A stretch of DNA of 57,811 bases, filler included, from Platydemus manokwari (Eukaryota): assembly GCA_037951405.1 (NCBI GenBank). It is 5 parts of 5 records of this genome, joined end to end, with 100 filler letters (N's around TTAATTAATTAA, not from the genome) between each part and the next. Parts side by side here need not be neighbours in the genome. Positions count along the whole stretch, not along the records: positions 47,450 to 57,811 come from JBBMOY011140550.1; 4 more parts are not named here. The stretch is one strand, 5' to 3'. Both the position numbers and the translations under genes were made by a program. Below, piece by piece: positions 47,450 to 57,811 of the stretch. The notes under the pieces were generated by a model. The model ran no database searches. It saw only the letters and a list, made by a program, of their open reading frames with translations, and had not been told where the DNA came from. Position 1 is the stretch's first letter; every line of letters starts with the position of its first letter.

Positions 47450-48281
47450 ATTATTCTTTATTTGCCCCAATTAGATTTATCAAGTTAATAAATAATAATA
47501 ATTATTCACATTATTATTATTACCATTATCGTTATCTTTATTATTATAAAGTTAGAAATTTTTGATACTTAGCGTGATATTTTTTCTATAGCTCACTTCT
47601 TACACTATAAAGGTTTGCACTGAATTGATCTACAACTAATTCTAATTATAGATTTATAATCAATGTGACATCTTTTACAAAGAATTTATCGCACAGAGTA
47701 TAAACCTGTTTTAAGTAACTGACTTATTTTAAAAAAACAAGCACAGTCCCGTGTATCTTCTGAATATACCAGCACAGAAACTACTGGCTGCTATTGCAAA
47801 CTACCTATGTATCAGGTCTCAGTGCAATACCAGTTAGTGATTTACTAGCTGACCAAAAATACAGCATAAATGAATAATTCTTATCTGAGTGATTTCGTCG
47901 GATTGAATTGCTATTAAAAGAGTTATCTCTGCTCTAAATTTTCAGTGCTCATTCAATGGATGTGCCTGTTGATCATGTTTTCAAATGAATGTGATCTTTG
48001 TAATTTATATGGCCGATCCTACTGTTTCTCGATCGTTTTACTTAATATATTATTGTCTTGATATCTTAAATCTTTAATTACTTTTAATTATAATTGTATT
48101 AATATTATTTTATTTCTAATAATAATAATTATTAATTATTTTTGTATCTTATTTTATACATTTTGATTTTATGTCATTTATATTTTTTCTGTTTGTCTTT
48201 ATAACTCTCCTGTTTTACTTTTACCTTTTATTTTTAATATTATTCTCTAGTATACCATTATAACCATTATCATTATCTTTA

Positions 48282-48312
<31 letters not shown>

Positions 48313-48788
48313 AATTGGTATTAATAGTCGTTATCATAATCAAAATTGTATTATTATTATCATTATTATAACTATTATTATTATTATCATTATTATAAAT
48401 TGAATTTATTTTATCAATAAATATTATAAGCATCAATTTAAACATTTCTATATTTATATGGAATAGTTATAAATAAATATTTATCAATATTTAGATCGAA
48501 TCTCTGTCAATAATAACATTGAAGTGAAATATATGATAAGATATGAGAGTTATAATAATATTTTATTTAATATCGATAATCATAAAATCATGAATTCAAT
48601 GGGGCTTTAGATGGGGATAAATATGGCCATATTAACAGTATTATATTCATATGATTTAAATAATATTGCCATAGAAAGGTGTTTGAAATATAACTCATCA
48701 TTATCTATTATTTTAATTATATGATTATTATTTATATTAAAATCCAACAACTATAATCTGAGATTATATTTGACAATCATATATCCAG

Positions 48789-49173
48789 TTCATTCTGGCC
48801 GTCATTCGTGACAGTGTCAAAGGTTTGCTGAGAACGTCTCATCTAGCTGATAATATGGTTGCTATTCGCACATACGAACAAGAGATTCTCGGCATAATAG
48901 AACAGAAATTGTTGATTCCCATTTGCAAAGCCATCGAAAATGATCTTCGTGTCCAAATGTATAGTCACATATTGAAAACACGGTCTGAACTGAATCCCTT
49001 TACTGGCAGTGGAGATATCGTATCTTCATCAGCTACTGGTGTGCCTGGCTCCACAAACACTGCTGGTAATGCACAGAATTCATCTAATTCAACACATTTG
49101 ACATCGGTTAATATGATCCATTTTGTCAAAACAAAACCAATTCGATTTTTTGATCGCCATATACGAATTAAAG
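48789..49173 (+). CDS. WASHC4: WASH complex subunit 4 (SWIP/KIAA1033), internal exon A
   Basis: Acceptor ATATCCAG|TTC; FILAVIRDSVKGLLRTSHL...LLIPICKAIENDLRVQMYSH...NPF...PIRFFDRHIRIK matches WASHC4; donor G|GTGCTA; 59-nt intron follows. Confidence 0.9.
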
Positions 49174-49232
49174 GTGCTAATCGATCACAAAATCCATTGA
49201 TATTGTCAATTAAAGGAAATTATTGTTTGTAG

Positions 49233-49663
49233 ATTATGTCGAACATCATCTGGAAACAGTATTCTATAATTTGACAGCAATTTATCTTAGTGATTGGAGG
49301 AATTATGCTGAAATGCGCAGATTAGCTCAAAACCAATACAATATCTGCATTTCTACACCCGATATGCACTTGCCTAGCCAAAGCCTTGAACAAGGTCGTG
49401 ATGTGCTCAACATCATGCGTGGAATGGCCGAATTTTCTTCGCATTATACATACAATCTCAATACTCAGGTGTTCTTGGAGAAACAATCCGATAACAAGTT
49501 TCTCAACACAGTCAACATTGTCCATGTTGCAAACTCGATCAGAACTCATGGTTGGGGAATCATCAATACCACAATCAATAATGCATATGTTTTTCTCAAG
49601 GATAAGTTCTTCCAGTTTTCTGAATTTCTCTATGATGAAAGGATAAAGGGAAAACTTATAAAG
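49233..49663 (+). CDS. WASHC4: WASH complex subunit 4, internal exon B
   Basis: Acceptor TTTGTAG|AT; contains hallmark segments HLPSQSLEQGRDVL, YNLNTQVFLEK, HVANSIRTHGWGIINTT and YDERIKGKLIK; donor AAG|GTTTAT. Confidence 0.93.
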
Positions 49664-49685
49664 GTTTATTTAATTAAATATGATA

Positions 49686-49977
49686 NNNNNNNNNNNNNNN
49701 NNNNNNNNNNNNNNNNNNNNNNNNNNNNNNNNNNNNNNNNNNNNNNNNNNNNNNNNNNNNNNNNNNNNNNNNNNNNNNNNNNNNNNNNNNNNNNNNNNNN
49801 NNNNNNNNNNNNNNNNNNNNNNNNNNNNNNNNNNNNNNNNNNNNNNNNNNNNNNNNNNNNNNNNNNNNNNNNNNNNNNNNNNNNNNNNNNNNNNNNNNNN
49901 NNNNNNNNNNNNNNNNNNNNNNNNNNNNNNNNNNNNNNNNNNNNNNNNNNNNNNNNNNNNNNNNNNNNNNNNNNNNN
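49686..49977. other. Scaffold gap (292 N)
   Basis: Run of N without the linker sequence. Confidence 0.97.
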
Positions 49978-50230
49978 CTGAATATTTCTACTCAAATCCT
50001 ATCATAAACCTAAATTTCATCCCATATATTGACACGAACGATATTCTTAACGAAGTTAATTATAAAGTTTGATTAATCGAGTCGGTCAGTGAAAAAAAAT
50101 TATGCTACTCTTTAAGTAGGGCCATATATTTAGTTTTGATAAATTTTAATAAATCATTCATTTCGGTTAAGTTAATTCTTTCATAAATTAATATGAAATT
50201 GGTTTTAATATCTGATGTTGTTGTTTTCAG

Positions 50231-53057
50231 ATATTTCCGTGTAAATATCTAATGTTTTGGATTTGGTGTGTATGTTTACTGCCGAAAGAAGTCAAATCAC
50301 AAATCGAGATCCATTTCAAAGTAATCGAAGAAAGTTTAAGCAACTCTATCATCGGCAACATACACCAACAATCATTAAAACAAAATGGTGGAATCACATC
50401 GAGCGATTACTCTTACAAGTCAGTCACAGATATTGAACCGTTCACTCTTGATCTCAGAACGTACGATTTCAAAGTGGCTAAACGTGTCGACAGAGAGGCC
50501 TTATGTAAAACACCACCAAAGAATCCCCAACAAAACTGTTTGAAGACATACAAATTCATTCAAACCAAAATATTCAAAGAAGGGAGCCAAAACGAAGGCA
50601 ATCCAATACAAATCATTATTCTCCACGTGGAAATCATTGATATAAATGACAACGCACCAAAATGGCCCAGTCCTCAGTTTCATTTTTATATACCCGAACA
50701 TTCCAAAATAGGAACTGAAATTTCATTGCCTCTGGCAATAGACTCAGATCAACCCCCAATGAATACAACTCAGAAATATGTCATCGGTTATCAGTCAATT
50801 AAGGACGGTTTTATTTTGAAACATACCGGTAGAGACACTAGTGGAGAGAAACTATGGCTCATGGTTAATAAAGATTTTGATCGAGAAATACAGGCAAGCG
50901 TTAATATCAAATTGAAAGCTTATGATGGGGGACCACAGCCATTAAGTAGTCAGCTGGATATAAACATTTCTCTCACCGATATTAACGACAAACAACCTCA
51001 ATTCAAGCGACATAATATCCATAAAACTATATCCGAAAATATAGCATTACGAAGTCTGATATTGCAACTTGAAGCCAGTGATGAGGACGAATCCAATAAG
51101 CAAAACCTGCGATTTCAATTCGATAATTCCGTTGATGAAACAGTAAGAAACAGATTCTACATCAATCCAACAACGGGGGAAATTTTCACTGCTGGATACA
51201 TTGATTATGAAACCAAATCTGAATATTCAATTCCCGTGTTGGTGACTGATGGAACTCATTTCGACAGAGCTCTGCTGACAATAGAAGTGAAAAATACGAA
51301 TGATAATCATCCAGAAATATCTGTTCTTTATCTGAGTGGATCGAATTTTAAAGCTCCCAGACAAAGTTCCCAATATCGAGCATTTATAGCGGAAAATAAA
51401 GAACCCGGTTTCGTATTGGCAAGTTTATCGGTATCAGACAAAGATTTTGAATCTAAAAGAGGATTAAGTCAATTGGATTGTAAAATAGAGCCGAGTAGAG
51501 AAAATCTCGAACTGAAACGATCGCAAATGAAATTAAACGACCATTTTCAGATCGTTACAACCAAGAAATTTGATCGAGAAGAAGCATCGCAATATTTTAT
51601 TCAACTGATTTGCTTTGATAGCGATTCAATACCGCTCTCAACTAGTGTTACGTTTGAAATTTCTATTATCGATGTAAACGACAATCCACCGGTCTTTGAA
51701 GTACCATTTCCAGAATCAAGAGGAATCCCAAATTATAGTATTAAAGAAGGAGCACCGATTGGAACAACAATAGTTCAGGTCAAAGCAACTGATCGCGATA
51801 TTGGCAATAATGCCAATATTCAATACTCGCTGGATTCAATGTCGAATACTTATTTCAGTATCGATCCAATCACCGGTGAATTGAGAAATGTAGATGTTTT
51901 TGATTTTGAAAAGACAGAGAAATTCGAAATAACTATCAATGCTTCAAATCCCATAGTTGAGAGGAAAAATTCCGTTCTTCTCAGTACATTGCAGAAAATT
52001 ACAGTTAATATTGAAGATGTTAATGACTGTCCACCGGTGTTTATGAAGGATCTCTATACATTTTCTGTCAAAGAAGGACCAAGCAAGGACGTTTTTGTCG
52101 GTAGAGTCGACGTAAAAGATGACGATACAAGTGCTATATACAATACAAACTATTTTCGAATAATATCCAATCCCAATGATTACTTCGAATCATCCGATTC
52201 ACATGTTAGTTCGAATGTTAATTCTGATCCATCACAATATTTTCGAATCGGTGAAACCGGTTTTATCTATGTTAATGTACCTGTACTCGATCGGGAAAAG
52301 GTTTCCAGTTTTTCCTTCAAAATATTAGCTGCCGATCGCAGTGAAAAACCGTTGAGCAGTACAGCAATCATTCAAATACAAATTCTCGATGTTAATGACA
52401 ATCCACCTCTGTGGATATTCCCAAATACTCATACTTATACGGTGAATGTTTCATATCAAGAAGCAGTGGGCCATTGCATTGCACAATTGAAGGCCAACGA
52501 TCCCGATCTCGAGGATAATGGAAAAGTTTCTTACAGAATAGTGCCATCAAAGTCTTCATCATTTCCACCACAATCGATACAAAATTCTGATCTCAAATCC
52601 GCCGAAACTGCACAATCATCGGACAGTTTATTCAAACGGCATGATATATTCGATCTTGACAGTTCGACCGGCAATATATACATTGCACAAAAAATGACAA
52701 TCAATGATGTTGGTCTCAAAGCTATTTGGGTCGAGGTGAGCGATCATGGAAGTCCACCATTAAAAACATTCGAAAGATTGTTGGTATACATCATCAATAC
52801 AGACAATAACGGTCACGGTTCTTCTCAAGGTCAGTTGAACAAACGTTTCGGTTTGTCTCGGGCGGGATTTGAAAATGATTTAATGATCATGATTGTTTTG
52901 GTGGCAATAATTATTCTCGTTGCTATGGTTATGGTAATTATCATACTCATGTTGAGGTGCAGAAATACCGGTAGACGACTGGCATTAACGAAAATGTGCC
53001 AAGATACCCCTCAAAGTATAAGCGCTAGTCGATCATTTCTCGAAAGGCGACCCGATG
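50231..53057 (+). CDS. Protocadherin (7 cadherin repeats, delta-1-like): large exon encoding the signal region, ectodomain, TM and juxtamembrane segment
   Basis: Acceptor TTGTTTTCAG|ATA in frame with ATG 50252; DREALC..C in EC1; linkers DINDNAP, DINDKQP, NTNDNHP, DVNDNPP, DVNDCPP, DVNDNPP; TM LMIMIVLVAIIILVAMVMVIIILML; phase-1 donor GATG|GTAAAT. Confidence 0.95.
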
Positions 53058-53632
53058 GTAAATTGATTATCGTTAATTATTTTATTAATAGTAACTAAAA
53101 TCATTATCAATTAAATATTTCAATGATTTTTTCAATGGGATTTATTATCAAAATTTTCGTTTTCCGACAAAAAAAATATTCTTCAAACGATTGATGTAAA
53201 TAAAATATTGTTTTGTATTTGATGAACAAAAATATGTCGCTTAATACACGCGTATCGCACGAATTATAAGTTGTATTCGATCGATAATGATATTAAATGA
53301 TAGAATTAACTTAATGTGATGAAATAATCATATTTTGTTTTAATTAAGTCGACATTTGATTAAATCCTAATTCATAATTTGATATGATTTAAAGCTGAAA
53401 TTTCAAGTGAAAGAGAATGTATCAATTTTCATAATTACACTTGCTGTATCAGAAAAATCAGAACAAAAAACACATTTCACCGATTCAAGAATGTGTGATT
53501 AATCCTTTAATATTTTTATCGGATTTTTTAAATAGAATTTCTTTGATATTTATTATTTGAAAACAGCGAAATCCGAATGTTTTATCGTCTAACATATTTG
53601 GGGGAATTATTAATGAACAATATAATTGCTAC

Positions 53633-54724
53633 TGTGAGATATTTTCAATGAATGAAACTTTTGTATTTAAAAAGATTTTTGGTGTCTTGACTTTTCAGTT
53701 TGTTTTTAATGTGTGGTTTTTGAAATAGCGACGGCTAATATGGCGACCACCCATCTGTATTCGATTCTGAAAAGATAAACGTCTGAAAATTATGGGAAAG
53801 AATAATGAAGATATTGAGACCATTGTGAGAATATCAAATTGAATTCGATTTGAATTAGTATAGAATTTAATTTTATATTGAATTTAATTTGGTATTAAAT
53901 TTTCTTTATTTGTTTAAATAATTGTCTTTAAAATATAATTGAATGTCGAGTCTTTTCAGTTTGTTTTCGATGTGTTTTTTTGTAAAACAGTAGCGGCTTA
54001 CATGGCGACCACGCATCTGGATTCGATTCTGAGAAGATCGATGACTGCGAATTAAGGAAAAGAAGTAGAAAGATGTTGATACTGTATAGAGAATATATAA
54101 AGAAGGTAAAAAAATGAAGATTAAATATAAAGAAGATATAGAGAAGACATAGAGAAGATATATAAAATCTATAAAAGATAGAAGAATAAGAGAGCTTTAC
54201 GTAGATAAATATTACGAGTTTTCAATACAATGTAAATTAAGAATACAAAGATTTAAAAAAAGTGGGATGTGAGAATACCAAATTGAATTTAATTTGGTAT
54301 TAAATTTTCTTTATTTGTTTAAATAATTGTCTTTAAAATACAATTGAATGTAAAATCTTTTCAGTTCGTTTTCCATGCTTTTTTGTAAAACAGTAGCGGC
54401 TTACAACCATATTGAGAACATATAAAGAAAATATAAGGAATATGTAAAGAAGTTGTAGAAGAGATAAAAGAGATATAAATGAAGATATTAATAAAAGATG
54501 GAAGAATTATATTTTTCGTGTAATGAAATATGTAGAGTATTCGCTACAGAGACAATCAACAAAATCAAAGATTTTAAAAAAGGGGCATGGATTTTGTATG
54601 AAATATATTTTAATTCTAATTTAATATAAAATCATAAATTAAATTTATTTGTTTAAATATTTGTAGTGTCTTGACTTTTCAGTTCGTTTTTAATGTGTGG
54701 TTTTTAAAATAGTAGCAGCTGACA
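53633..54724 (+). mobile_element. Older TRIM copy (outer), interrupted by a younger copy
   Basis: 5' LTR ends CGACGGCTAATA (53740) followed by PBS TGGCGACCAC; internal region resumes colinearly at 54411; PPT AAAAAGGGGCA; 3' LTR ends GTAGCAGCTGACA (54724); outer TSD not recoverable. Confidence 0.75.
53824..54405 (+). mobile_element. Complete miniature LTR retrotransposon (TRIM), 582 bp
   Basis: 5' LTR 53824-54002 and 3' LTR 54268-54405, both TGTGAGAATA...GCGGCTTACA; PBS TGGCGACCACG at 54003-54013; PPT AAAAAAAGTGGGA at 54255-54267; 5-bp TSD ACCAT on both sides; no ORF. Confidence 0.92.
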
Positions 54725-54773
54725 ATATATTAATATATAAAATATAAGTAAAAGTCTCGAATAAAATTTCTAA

Positions 54774-54776
<3 letters not shown>

Positions 54777-54812
<36 letters not shown>
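54777..54812. repeat. (AAT)n microsatellite
   Basis: Trinucleotide repeat visible directly. Confidence 0.9.
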
Positions 54813-54813
<1 letters not shown>

Positions 54814-55699
54814 CTTATAATAAAATTAATAATCACAAATTTACATTTATTATTAATTGATTTTCGCGGTGCTAAAATTTATACAAATTTTTCTCGAAAC
54901 ACCTCATAATGACATCAAATTATCCCGACCGAAAAAGAGTTCCTACATTCCCACCGAAATATTTTCAGTGATATAAAAATATTATCATATAATTATTATA
55001 TAATGTTTTGGTTGAATTTTATTGATTTATTATTAATAATGATTATATATTGATTTTATACAACAAATTATTTGACAACAAATAATTATACAATAGGAAA
55101 TACAATAATGCTTTTACAAAACCCACCTGATTCTGACGGAAATAAAATATATTCAGTGGAGTGGGGAGAAATAAATGGTCATATTTACATAATTGATCTA
55201 ATAAACTTAACAATTTAAGGTCAATAAAATAAGAACTAAAAACTTCTTCAAATATATAAATTGATCTACTAAATAAATTAACATGTGTACACATTTTCTG
55301 TTGAATAGATTTAGGTTTCTTTTAGTTAAACTTTATAAACTTATTTGAATCACTCGATCCATAGGTGTAACGGATTTCTCGGGAACAATATTTTTCGTCA
55401 GATTAAAACAACAATCCAGGAATGAGTTGGATTTTTTAATCAATTCCAAAACTCTTACAATCTTACGCATGTTTACAGAAATCGACAAAATAAACTTGCT
55501 TGAAAATTCGATATTTGGCATTCTGTATTTTTCTATAAAACCTTGAACACGAAAATCTGTAGTTAAATCGATTAATAAAGACTACCAAGCCAAAATGTAA
55601 TTGATATAATGTAATTTATCCGCTTCAGTGAGGATTTTAAAAATAAATTAATATTTAATTGATTATTTTGAATAGAAAATATATTGATATTAAACAATA

Positions 55700-56155
55700 T
55701 AAATGATCGATTTCATGTGATATGATTTTATAATTAAATATGCTTTTGTGATTTGAATTTCTCATATTTGAAATGGAAGCAGCAGACACGGCTAACCAGT
55801 ATTTGGATTCGATTATGAGAGAATCAACGTCAAATATATTTAGAGAGTACAGGCAAGTGGATATATATAATATGATTTTATAAATTGGTAAATATATTGA
55901 TAATTCGACACCAAGAATATAAAAAATATCTGGATAATTTCAGATATATAATACAGACAACGAGTAGAGATTTCGATTTCAACAAAATTGAAGATTTTAA
56001 GGAATCTGGAGATGCGAATATTTTAAAATCAATTAATATAAGAAGGGTCATTTTAAACAGAAAATATATTTATATTAAAAAATATAAATTTTTAATTTAA
56101 TTTGTTTGAATATTTAGATTACATATATTTTTGTGGGTTGAAGTTCTCAAATTCT
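55700..56155 (+). mobile_element. Highly diverged TRIM-family copy
   Basis: GCAGCAGACA LTR-end-like sequence, degenerate PBS, conserved TGGATTCGATTATGAGA, PPT-like AAGATTTTAAGGAATCTGGAGA, then TGCGAATATTTT; boundaries approximate. Confidence 0.5.
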
Positions 56156-56543
56156 TATTTTATGAATTATTATTAATGAATTTTTTATAATTATAATTTA
56201 TAAAATTATTAATAAGATCCCAATACATTTCTGCAAACAATATTTTTACAATTTTTGAAACAGTTCTTAATATCGACTTCCGAAATGGCTTTCAACATAT
56301 TCTCCTATTTAGTTTCATCGCCTCTAAATATATTCATGTTGTGGATTATGTGCTTATTAAATAACTAGAAGTTACGATATTGGTTCACCTTTGACTCGAT
56401 CGATAGTCGCTCAGTTGATACGTTGTTTCCGACTTACAGATATAGATCCGAAATTTAATGCAACGTCAATGCTCATATAAATCCAACATTGTATATTTCG
56501 AATAAGACACTTTATCTTGATAATTATTAGCTTAACTTTTTAA

Positions 56544-57051
56544 CCAATGAAAATAGTGACATAATATTTGACTTTGATGTCATTGACAGTAATACCAATC
56601 TAAACGAATTATTTGTAAAAATCGATAATTTTAAATTGAAAATTCCCCGCCATATTTGATCAAAATTTCACAGTGATAATGATCTTCATTTTGCACACAG
56701 AATGACCAATTGAAATTTATTGACCAATGAGGTCAATTGGTAGAAATTGTATGACATCAATAGGAGAATGAAATTCATCAATAAAAATGGTTACTCGCAG
56801 ATTTTTACCCATAAATTGAATTTTATTTTTCGTATGTATCGATTATTTCTGAGGTTATTTAAAATGTTCAATTGGGAATGTTTTGGTCATCAAAATCTTT
56901 CAAGTTAAAATCCTCAACTGCCAAAAATGGCAACTTTTCCTTGAGACAGGGCTTCGTCGTTTGTATATGAGCGAACCAATACTGGTGCGTGCTTTGAGTT
57001 TTTAATAAAATTATATTTAATACGTTATGATTGGCCATAAAATATAATTGG
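56544..57051. promoter_or_regulatory. CCAAT-box cluster with a GC/E2F-like element (putative NF-Y promoter)
   Basis: CCAAT or ATTGG at 56544, 56595, 56706, 56724, 56736, 56871, 56976, 57030 and 57047; TTCCCCGCC at ~56643. Confidence 0.45.
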
Positions 57052-57811
57052 TTTATAATTCAATAATTAGTTTATAAATTATATTTTTACTGAAACATTG
57101 AACACGAGAAATTGTTGGTCATTATTTTAGTCACATCCCCATTGATTAAAATCATTGAATTATCATGAAATATTATTCAATATTTTCTGTCAATAACACA
57201 TTGATATTTAAAATCTACTTCTTCAAATGTCAAATCTGCGGGATTTTATCATATTTATCAAACGTTATTATAATAATATGACACTTCAATGGCAGATCGA
57301 TAGATATAAATTTTTAAAATTTTTTCATCAATTTTATTGCAACATATTTTGAAAACTAAAATTTTATTGATAGATTATTTTAATCAATAATTTTAATATT
57401 TTATTCAATATTTTTAATAAAAATAATTTAAAATTGTAAGTCTATATTTGATTGTGCTCACTGTAGTAATTATTTTCTCTTTCATTTATATATTGGTCGT
57501 AGACAATAGAATTTATTCCAATCCTATTATGATGGAAAATTTTAATTACATAGCGTAGATCGCTATTGTTTTCTCAGAATTTCGGAAAGAAAATAATCGC
57601 AACCAGTAAAATTCATCCCAAATAAACCGAGAGTGATTCCAGTTTAAAATAAACAAAGCAAAATTAATCTGATAATTCTATTTTTATTATTATTAATGAA
57701 ATAATAGTATTATTATTATCATTATTATTATTATAAATCTAAGCTTTTATAATGAATATTAATAATAATAAAATTGCTCAGAATTGCGATGACAATTTAA
57801 ATGACATTTTA

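What the first reader, a model, noticed from the sequence alone, without database searches (positions are those of the whole stretch)
53633..54724. Miniature LTR retrotransposon (TRIM) nested inside an older copy of itself
Seen in the sequence: a 582-bp non-coding element with TG...CA LTRs (179 and 138 bp; the 5' LTR has a ~40-bp internal expansion), PBS, PPT and an exact ACCAT 5-bp TSD. Removing it and one TSD rebuilds a second element whose internal region is colinear with the inner one (GATATTGAGACCATATTGAGAACATATAAAGAA versus GATGTTGATACTGTATAGAGAATATATAAAGAA). Established knowledge: TRIMs are non-autonomous LTR elements known mainly from plants and a few animals, including taeniid cestodes. 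Inference: this is a possibly undescribed flatworm TRIM family, active over a long period, mobilised by a Gypsy/BEL-type helper, and perhaps prone to self-insertion.
Basis: partly seen in the sequence, partly recalled or inferred. Interest (0 to 1): 0.8.

Follow-up and report, generated by a model that had tools for sequence, protein, structure and literature searches.

The report
Nested miniature LTR retrotransposon (TRIM) copies
A 582-base non-coding "miniature" LTR retrotransposon sits inside an older copy of its own family, which has thousands of copies in this AT-rich animal genome: a real but ordinary kind of mobile element, probably a new family of a known type.

Summary
The inner element (53824-54405) has two LTRs of 179 and 138 bp with TG...CA ends. 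They differ by 8 substitutions in 138 aligned positions, plus a 39-bp and a 2-bp indel. A TGG-type primer binding site abuts the 5' LTR, a purine tract abuts the 3' LTR, and an exact ACCAT duplication flanks the element. Removing it and one ACCAT rebuilds an internal region that aligns without a gap at the junction to the inner one (81% identity).

The outer copy is much more decayed. Its LTRs align only over their last ~80 nt (80% identity), its 5' LTR ends TA rather than CA, and it has no target-site duplication.

A third, older paired-LTR copy lies at about 55628-56175. Contigs of the one public run holding this locus pile up on the element at roughly 260-5000 times the depth of the unique flanks, so the family is very abundant.

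No ORF exceeds 48 aa. No tRNA, 5S or hammerhead RNA was found. The family shows no sequence likeness to the cestode ta-TRIM.

Verdict: a genuine TRIM-type non-autonomous LTR element with a nested insertion, and a new member of a known kind. At this copy number nesting is expected by chance. The helper element, the flatworm host and expression remain untested.

The parts
53633..53740 (+). Outer (older) copy, 5' LTR. The start is uncertain and the end has mutated to TA.
   Evidence: TGTGAGA at 53633 matches the start of the inner LTRs 7 of 7. The last 81 nt are 80% identical to the outer 3' LTR. Upstream of 53660 there is no significant similarity to the outer 3' LTR.
53741..53823 (+). Outer copy: PBS (TGGCGACCACCCATCTG) and the 5' part of the internal region, up to the insertion point.
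   Evidence: Aligns with the first ~83 nt of the inner internal region. The PBS pattern occurs twice in the window against 0 expected.
53819..53823 (+). Left copy of the ACCAT target-site duplication of the inner element.
   Evidence: Chance of a 5-mer match is about 0.002-0.003.
53824..54002 (+). Inner copy, 5' LTR (179 bp, TGTGAG...TTACA), holding a 39-bp tandem expansion at about 53838-53876.
   Evidence: TRF finds a 17-nt unit in 2.6 copies at 53859-53902.
54003..54020 (+). Inner copy, primer binding site TGGCGACCACGCATCTGG, directly after the LTR.
   Evidence: Sequence. The first 11 nt are identical to the ERV9/HERV-W PBS tggcgaccacgaagggac, which is labelled tRNA-Arg or tRNA-Trp (PMC4724089).
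54003..54267 (+). Inner copy, non-coding internal region (265 nt) with 11-nt purine-rich tandem units.
   Evidence: No ORF over 48 aa. No Pfam hit. TRF array at 54125-54162. RNA fold z-score -1.1.
54255..54267 (+). Inner copy, polypurine tract AAAAAAAGTGGGA, directly before the 3' LTR.
   Evidence: Sequence. In other copies of the family the same PPT-to-TGTGAG junction is seen as the joint 54585->53824, depth 186.
54268..54405 (+). Inner copy, 3' LTR (138 bp).
54406..54410 (+). Right copy of the ACCAT target-site duplication.
54411..54587 (+). Outer copy: 3' part of the internal region, ending in the PPT AAAAAAGGGGCA (54576-54587).
   Evidence: Aligns with positions 83-263 of the inner internal region.
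54588..54724 (+). Outer copy, 3' LTR (137 bp, TGGATT...CTGACA).
   Evidence: Contigs of other copies run on into mutually unlike flanks at 54716 and 54724, with agreement 0.45-0.49.
55628..56175 (+). Third, oldest copy of the same family, with two LTRs (about 55628-55789 and 56013-56175) and a decayed PBS at 55790. The ends are approximate.
   Evidence: The LTR pair 55634-55768 / 56020-56153 scores 108 against 38 +/- 6 for shuffles. It is colinear with the inner element over ~530 nt.

Best explanation
This is a family of terminal-repeat retrotransposons in miniature (TRIM): non-coding, non-autonomous LTR retroelements of about 530-580 bp.

Likely mechanism (inferred from the general LTR-element mechanism):
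- An RNA is transcribed from the 5' LTR to the 3' LTR.
- It is packaged by the proteins of an unidentified autonomous LTR retrotransposon.
- Reverse transcription of the minus strand is primed by a host tRNA whose 3' end pairs with TGGCGACCACG (an Arg/Trp-type acceptor end). The plus strand is primed from the purine tract.
- The helper's integrase recognises the TG...CA ends and makes a 5-bp staggered cut, which produces the ACCAT duplication.

At this locus a younger copy (53824-54405) integrated into the internal region of an older, same-strand copy (about 53633-54724). A still older copy lies 0.9 kb downstream.

Shown here: the anatomy, the nested order of events, the relative ages and the high copy number. 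Inferred: mobilisation in trans, the identity of the primer tRNA and the type of helper.
For: - Exact LTR boundaries with TG...CA ends, and PBS and PPT abutting them.
- An exact 5-bp duplication whose removal restores an ungapped alignment with the inner internal region.
- No ORF over 48 aa and no protein domain.
- Three independent copies of different age share the same short LTR-internal-LTR layout, so the miniature form itself is what propagated.
- In the one public run holding the locus, 9007 contigs at 90% identity or more lie on the element. Summed depth is 3,700-70,000 against about 14 on the unique flanks.
- In the same run, other copies show PPT-to-LTR-start and LTR-end-to-PBS junctions, and mutually unlike flanks beyond the LTR end.
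- The first 11 nt of the PBS equal a known retroviral PBS type (PMC4724089).
Against: - No RNA data exist, so transcription is not shown.
- No host tRNA was available to test PBS pairing.
- No helper element was seen.
- The outer copy lacks a target-site duplication and its LTRs match only in their 3' part, so calling it 'one element' is weaker than for the inner copy.
- Short-read contigs do not bridge the nested structure (table 8), so the assembly of this exact arrangement is not independently confirmed.
- Depth of collapsed contigs is only a rough guide to copy number.
Confidence: 0.85

Rival explanations
1. These are LTRs of a larger autonomous retrotransposon, already catalogued or not. 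The short interiors would be local deletion derivatives rather than a self-propagating miniature family.
For: LTR bins are about 4-19 times deeper than internal-region bins. That is more than the 2:1 expected for intact short elements, so many LTRs may belong to solo LTRs or to other element forms. Repbase and Dfam could not be consulted.
Against: Three copies of different age share the same colinear short interior of 258-265 nt, and of comparable length in the third copy. The internal bins still reach 260-410 times the unique depth. No gag or pol remnant lies in the piece.
Confidence: 0.08
2. The four LTRs arose by unequal crossing-over or tandem duplication (an LTR-interior-LTR-interior-LTR array, as described for some ta-TRIMs), not by insertion of one copy into another.
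For: Tandem ta-TRIM arrays produced by unequal crossing-over are reported in PMC4558846.
Against: The two outer interior pieces are complementary halves (positions 1-83 and 83-263 of the interior), not full interiors. They are separated by a complete element bounded by an exact ACCAT duplication. The inner LTRs are far more alike (94%) than either is to the outer LTRs (about 68-87%, depending on the pair and the stretch compared).
Confidence: 0.03
3. The nested arrangement is an assembly artefact: reads from different copies of a very abundant repeat were joined wrongly.
For: The family has thousands of copies, and no contig of run X1 spans 53689-54823 (table 8).
Against: A chimeric join would not be expected to produce an exact 5-bp duplication at exact LTR ends together with an ungapped restoration of the interior.
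Confidence: 0.03

Closest known systems
Plant TRIMs as first defined (Witte et al. 2001, as cited in PMC4558846)
   Same: Same overall plan: short LTRs of 100-250 bp, a non-coding interior of a few hundred bp, a PBS and PPT abutting the LTRs, a total length of about 0.5 kb, high copy number, and nesting or clustering with other copies. The 5-bp duplication and the size range of the plant elements are quoted from my own knowledge of that literature.
   Different: No sequence relation is expected. The host is an animal. The PBS is of the Arg/Trp type rather than the tRNA-Met type usual in plant TRIMs (own knowledge, not tested here).
ta-TRIM of taeniid cestodes (Koziol et al. 2015, PMC4558846)
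   Same: An animal TRIM with TG...CA LTRs, PBS and PPT, no coding capacity, hundreds to thousands of loci and many solo LTRs.
   Different: ta-TRIM has LTRs of ~198 bp starting TGTAATAC, an interior of ~590 bp, a tRNA-Leu PBS (TGGCAGCGG) placed 4 nt after the LTR, a PPT 3 nt before the LTR, a 4-bp duplication and GC-rich sequence. Here the LTRs are 138-179 bp starting TGTGAG, the interior is 265 nt, the PBS TGGCGACCACG and the PPT abut the LTRs, the duplication is 5 bp and GC content is about 25%. There is no sequence likeness.
[quoted passage not shown]
   Same: The other metazoan TRIM family named in PMC4558846. It is the same kind of reduced LTR element.
   Different: The TRIM families of different groups are reported to be unrelated to one another.
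Retrozymes and Cassandra-type TRIMs
   Same: Small non-autonomous LTR elements.
   Different: Those carry a hammerhead ribozyme or a 5S RNA gene in the LTR. An Rfam scan at E<=10 finds neither here.

Membership tests
TRIM (terminal-repeat retrotransposon in miniature) | Two short direct terminal repeats (about 100-250 bp) with TG...CA ends | tested here: met
   The inner copy has LTRs of 179 and 138 bp, TGTGAG...TTACA, 94% identical. In the outer copy the ends have decayed (TA end; 3' LTR starts TGGATT).
TRIM (terminal-repeat retrotransposon in miniature) | A PBS next to the 5' LTR, complementary to the 3' end of a tRNA | tested here: inconclusive
   A TGG-type PBS abuts the LTR. Its first 11 nt are identical to the ERV9/HERV-W PBS. 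No tRNA of this host was available to test pairing.
TRIM (terminal-repeat retrotransposon in miniature) | A polypurine tract next to the 3' LTR | tested here: met
   AAAAAAAGTGGGA at 54255-54267 and AAAAAAGGGGCA at 54576-54587. The same junction is seen in other copies.
TRIM (terminal-repeat retrotransposon in miniature) | A target-site duplication of the length made by an LTR-element integrase (4-6 bp) | tested here: met
   Exact ACCAT on both sides of the inner copy. The outer copy has none.
TRIM (terminal-repeat retrotransposon in miniature) | No coding capacity and a total length well under 4 kb | tested here: met
   582 bp. The longest ORF is 48 aa and there is no Pfam domain.
TRIM (terminal-repeat retrotransposon in miniature) | A dispersed multicopy family in which the short form itself is repeated | tested here: met
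   Three short copies lie in the window. 9007 contigs lie on the element at 260-5000 times unique depth, with unlike flanks beyond the LTR end. No genome-wide count of full copies was possible.
TRIM (terminal-repeat retrotransposon in miniature) | Mobilised in trans by an autonomous LTR element that shares the LTR ends, PBS and duplication length | not testable with these tools
   Only 10 kb of this genome is available and no gag or pol sequence lies in it. Metagenome scans gave nothing.
ta-TRIM (taeniid cestodes) | LTR of ~198 bp starting TGTAATAC; tRNA-Leu PBS 4 nt after the LTR; 4-bp duplication; interior of ~590 bp | tested here: not met
   Every one of these features differs (searches compared).
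Retrozyme / Cassandra TRIM | A hammerhead ribozyme or 5S RNA gene inside the LTR | tested here: not met
   The Rfam scan at E<=10 gives only noise.
tRNA-derived SINE | A tRNA-like head with no LTRs | tested here: not met
   ARAGORN and Rfam find no tRNA, and paired LTRs are present.

The most novel reading that the evidence does not exclude
This would be an undescribed, lineage-specific TRIM family unrelated to ta-TRIM and to the ant TRIMs. That would make it a further independent origin of miniature LTR elements in animals. It would have amplified to thousands of copies in a poorly sampled AT-rich invertebrate (possibly a flatworm), and it would tend to land in clusters or in its own copies next to genes.
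Probability: 0.35. Interest if true: 0.4.

Novelty: new member of a known kind. Interest (0 to 1): 0.3.

Why it matters
TRIMs are well known in plants. In the literature searched here they are reported for only two animal groups, ants and taeniid tapeworms. In tapeworms their LTRs drive abundant stem-cell transcripts and new gene isoforms.

A very abundant TRIM family in another animal lineage would add a case of convergent reduction of LTR elements. It would also be a useful marker for insertion polymorphism and a possible source of promoters or polyadenylation sites. This cluster lies only 0.5 kb downstream of a protocadherin gene, on the same strand.

It does not change how such elements are thought to work.

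Tried and rejected
- Two exact-pattern scans of the metagenome collection with the PBS region found nothing.
- Exact-product look-ups of two short ORFs inside the element and of the protocadherin ORF found nothing on record.
- The homologue search with the protocadherin gave no close relative (best ~30% identity), so the host could not be named. I ran no further search on taxonomy.
- Only one public run holds the locus, kept as contigs. There is no RNA run, so expression could not be examined.
- No empty-site joint (53823 to 54411) was among the joints listed.
- An alternative, longer outer 5' LTR starting near 53599, suggested by a lenient BLAST hit, was rejected. Similarity upstream of 53660 is below that of shuffled controls.
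- Apparent family hits at 48066-48464 fall on both strands of low-complexity AT-rich DNA and were set aside.
- The internal region shows no unusual RNA folding (z-score -1.1).

Full report
**What is in the sequence**

The piece (47450-57811) is AT-rich: 22-27% GC outside genes and about 36% inside them. It carries exons of a WASH complex subunit 7 gene at 48825-49684, interrupted by an N gap at 49686-49977. It also carries one long protocadherin ORF at 50252-53098, on the + strand. The finding lies 0.5 kb downstream of that ORF, on the same strand.

**The inner element**

- Region 53824-54405 is 582 bp long.
- Its terminal repeats are 53824-54002 (179 bp) and 54268-54405 (138 bp). Both start TGTGAG and end TTACA.
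- Aligned with a long-gap-tolerant scheme, they differ by 8 substitutions in 138 columns (6 transitions, 2 transversions, K2P 0.061), plus a 39-bp and a 2-bp indel. The BLAST E-value between them is 5e-41.
- The 39 extra bases in the 5' LTR are additional copies of a 17-nt tandem unit. Contigs of other family copies also diverge at this point (loose end at 53873), so this is a variable mini-repeat in the LTR.
- TGGCGACCACGCATCTGG follows directly after the 5' LTR. AAAAAAAGTGGGA lies directly before the 3' LTR.
- ACCAT flanks the element on both sides (53819-53823 and 54406-54410). At this base composition an identical 5-mer at two fixed positions has a chance of about 0.002-0.003.
- No ORF exceeds 48 aa and no Pfam domain is found.
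- ARAGORN finds no tRNA. Rfam at E<=10 finds no tRNA, 5S RNA or hammerhead.
- The internal RNA does not fold better than shuffled sequence.

**The nesting**

Joining 53741-53823 to 54411-54587 gives a 258-nt sequence. It aligns end to end with the 265-nt inner interior, at 81% identity over 246 columns and with no gap at the junction.

BLAST places the two outer pieces on positions 1-94 and 83-263 of the inner interior. They are therefore complementary halves that share only the duplicated 5 bp.

This fits insertion of one copy into another. It does not fit a tandem LTR-interior-LTR array made by unequal crossing-over, which has been described for some ta-TRIMs.

- Its 5' LTR (53633-53740) ends TA instead of CA.
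- Its 3' LTR starts at 54588 with TGGATT.
- The two outer LTRs are 80% identical over their last 81 nt (K2P 0.23). Upstream of 53660 their similarity is lower than in shuffled controls.
- The start at 53633 rests on a 7-of-7 match (TGTGAGA) to the inner LTR start.
- There is no target-site duplication (GCTAC versus ATATA).
- On LTR divergence, the outer copy is roughly four times older than the inner one.

**A third copy**

A still older element lies at about 55628-56175.

- Its LTR pair (55634-55768 and 56020-56153) scores 108 against 38 +/- 6 for shuffles.
- A decayed PBS follows its 5' LTR (family D5).
- The whole copy is colinear with the inner element.

Three copies of different age share the same short layout. 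This shows that the miniature form itself was the transposing unit, rather than a one-off deletion.

**Family size**

Only one public run holds this locus, as assembled contigs. It may be the sample from which the window was assembled.

- Laid on 52000-56500, the unique flanks have a summed word depth of about 14.
- The element bins reach 3,700 (interior) to 70,000 (3' part of the LTR).
- 9,007 contigs of 90% identity or more lie on the stretch.
- Contigs from other copies show the PPT followed by TGTGAG (joint 54585->53824, depth 186) and the LTR end followed by the PBS.
- More than 100 contigs run past the LTR end (54716 and 54724) into mutually unlike AT-rich sequence (agreement 0.45-0.49).

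This is the signature of a dispersed family with thousands of LTR copies. The excess of LTR over interior suggests many solo LTRs, or faster decay of the interior. Depth of collapsed contigs is only a rough copy-number guide.

No contig bridges the nested structure, so the arrangement is not independently confirmed. A mis-join would nevertheless hardly produce an exact duplication and an ungapped restoration of the interior.

**Primer binding site**

The first 11 nt (TGGCGACCACG) are identical to the ERV9/HERV-W PBS tggcgaccacgaagggac, which is assigned to tRNA-Arg or tRNA-Trp in different resources (PMC4724089). These 11 nt correspond to CCA, the discriminator base and the 3' strand of the acceptor stem. 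The host tRNA could not be examined.

Just 3' of the 18-nt PBS, all three copies keep GGATTCGATT. Its complement resembles a T-loop but lies 2 nt out of register with a canonical tRNA. This is my own reading and is untested.

**Comparison with known families**

The anatomy meets the structural definition of a TRIM.

The only flatworm TRIM in the searched literature is ta-TRIM. It differs in every diagnostic detail and in sequence:

| Feature | ta-TRIM | This family |
|---|---|---|
| LTR | ~198 bp, starts TGTAATAC | 138-179 bp, starts TGTGAG |
| Interior | ~590 bp | 265 nt |
| PBS | tRNA-Leu type (TGGCAGCGG), 4 nt after the LTR | TGGCGACCACG, abutting the LTR |
| Target-site duplication | 4 bp | 5 bp |
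| Composition | GC-rich | about 25% GC |

That paper also reports no ta-TRIM-like sequence in other flatworms, and it states that TRIM families of different groups are unrelated products of convergent reduction.

**What remains open**

- The host. The protocadherin has no relative above about 30% identity. Its only near-full-length hit is a Clonorchis protein at 28% identity and 95% coverage. That is a weak hint of a flatworm.
- The helper element.
- Expression.
- Whether the family is already in Repbase or Dfam.

Self-insertion preference is not needed to explain the nesting. With thousands of copies, some insertions into older copies are expected by chance.

**Verdict**

The TRIM and nesting interpretation is supported. 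The claims about the helper, the host and a self-insertion bias are untested or unnecessary. This is a new member of a known kind and of modest interest.

Noticed in passing
window 55628-56175: A third, older paired-LTR copy of the same family with a decayed PBS at 55790. That makes three same-strand copies within 2.6 kb, just downstream of the protocadherin ORF.
   Followed up: yes
window 54021-54031, 53759-53769, 55808-55817: GGATTCGATT(C) lies directly 3' of the PBS and is kept in all three copies. Its complement (GAATCGAATCC) looks like a tRNA T-loop and T-stem but is 2 nt out of register with a canonical tRNA 3' end. No tRNA is called by ARAGORN or Rfam.
   Followed up: partly
window 54125-54162, 54415-54451, 54458-54492: Purine-rich tandem units of 11-12 nt (such as ATATAGAGAAG) make up much of the internal region of both nested copies.
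   Followed up: partly
window 54776-54833: An (ATA)n microsatellite of about 20 units lies 50 bp downstream of the outer 3' LTR. The reads tool skipped this repeat.
   Followed up: no
window 50252-53098: A 948-aa single-exon protocadherin ORF (six cadherin repeats and a FAT4-like N-terminal domain). It has no relative above ~30% identity in a 5.8-billion-protein collection, so the host lineage is poorly sampled.
   Followed up: partly
window 48825-49684 and 49686-49977: Two adjacent ORFs in different frames match the middle domain of WASH complex subunit 7. The gene runs into a 292-base N gap.
   Followed up: no
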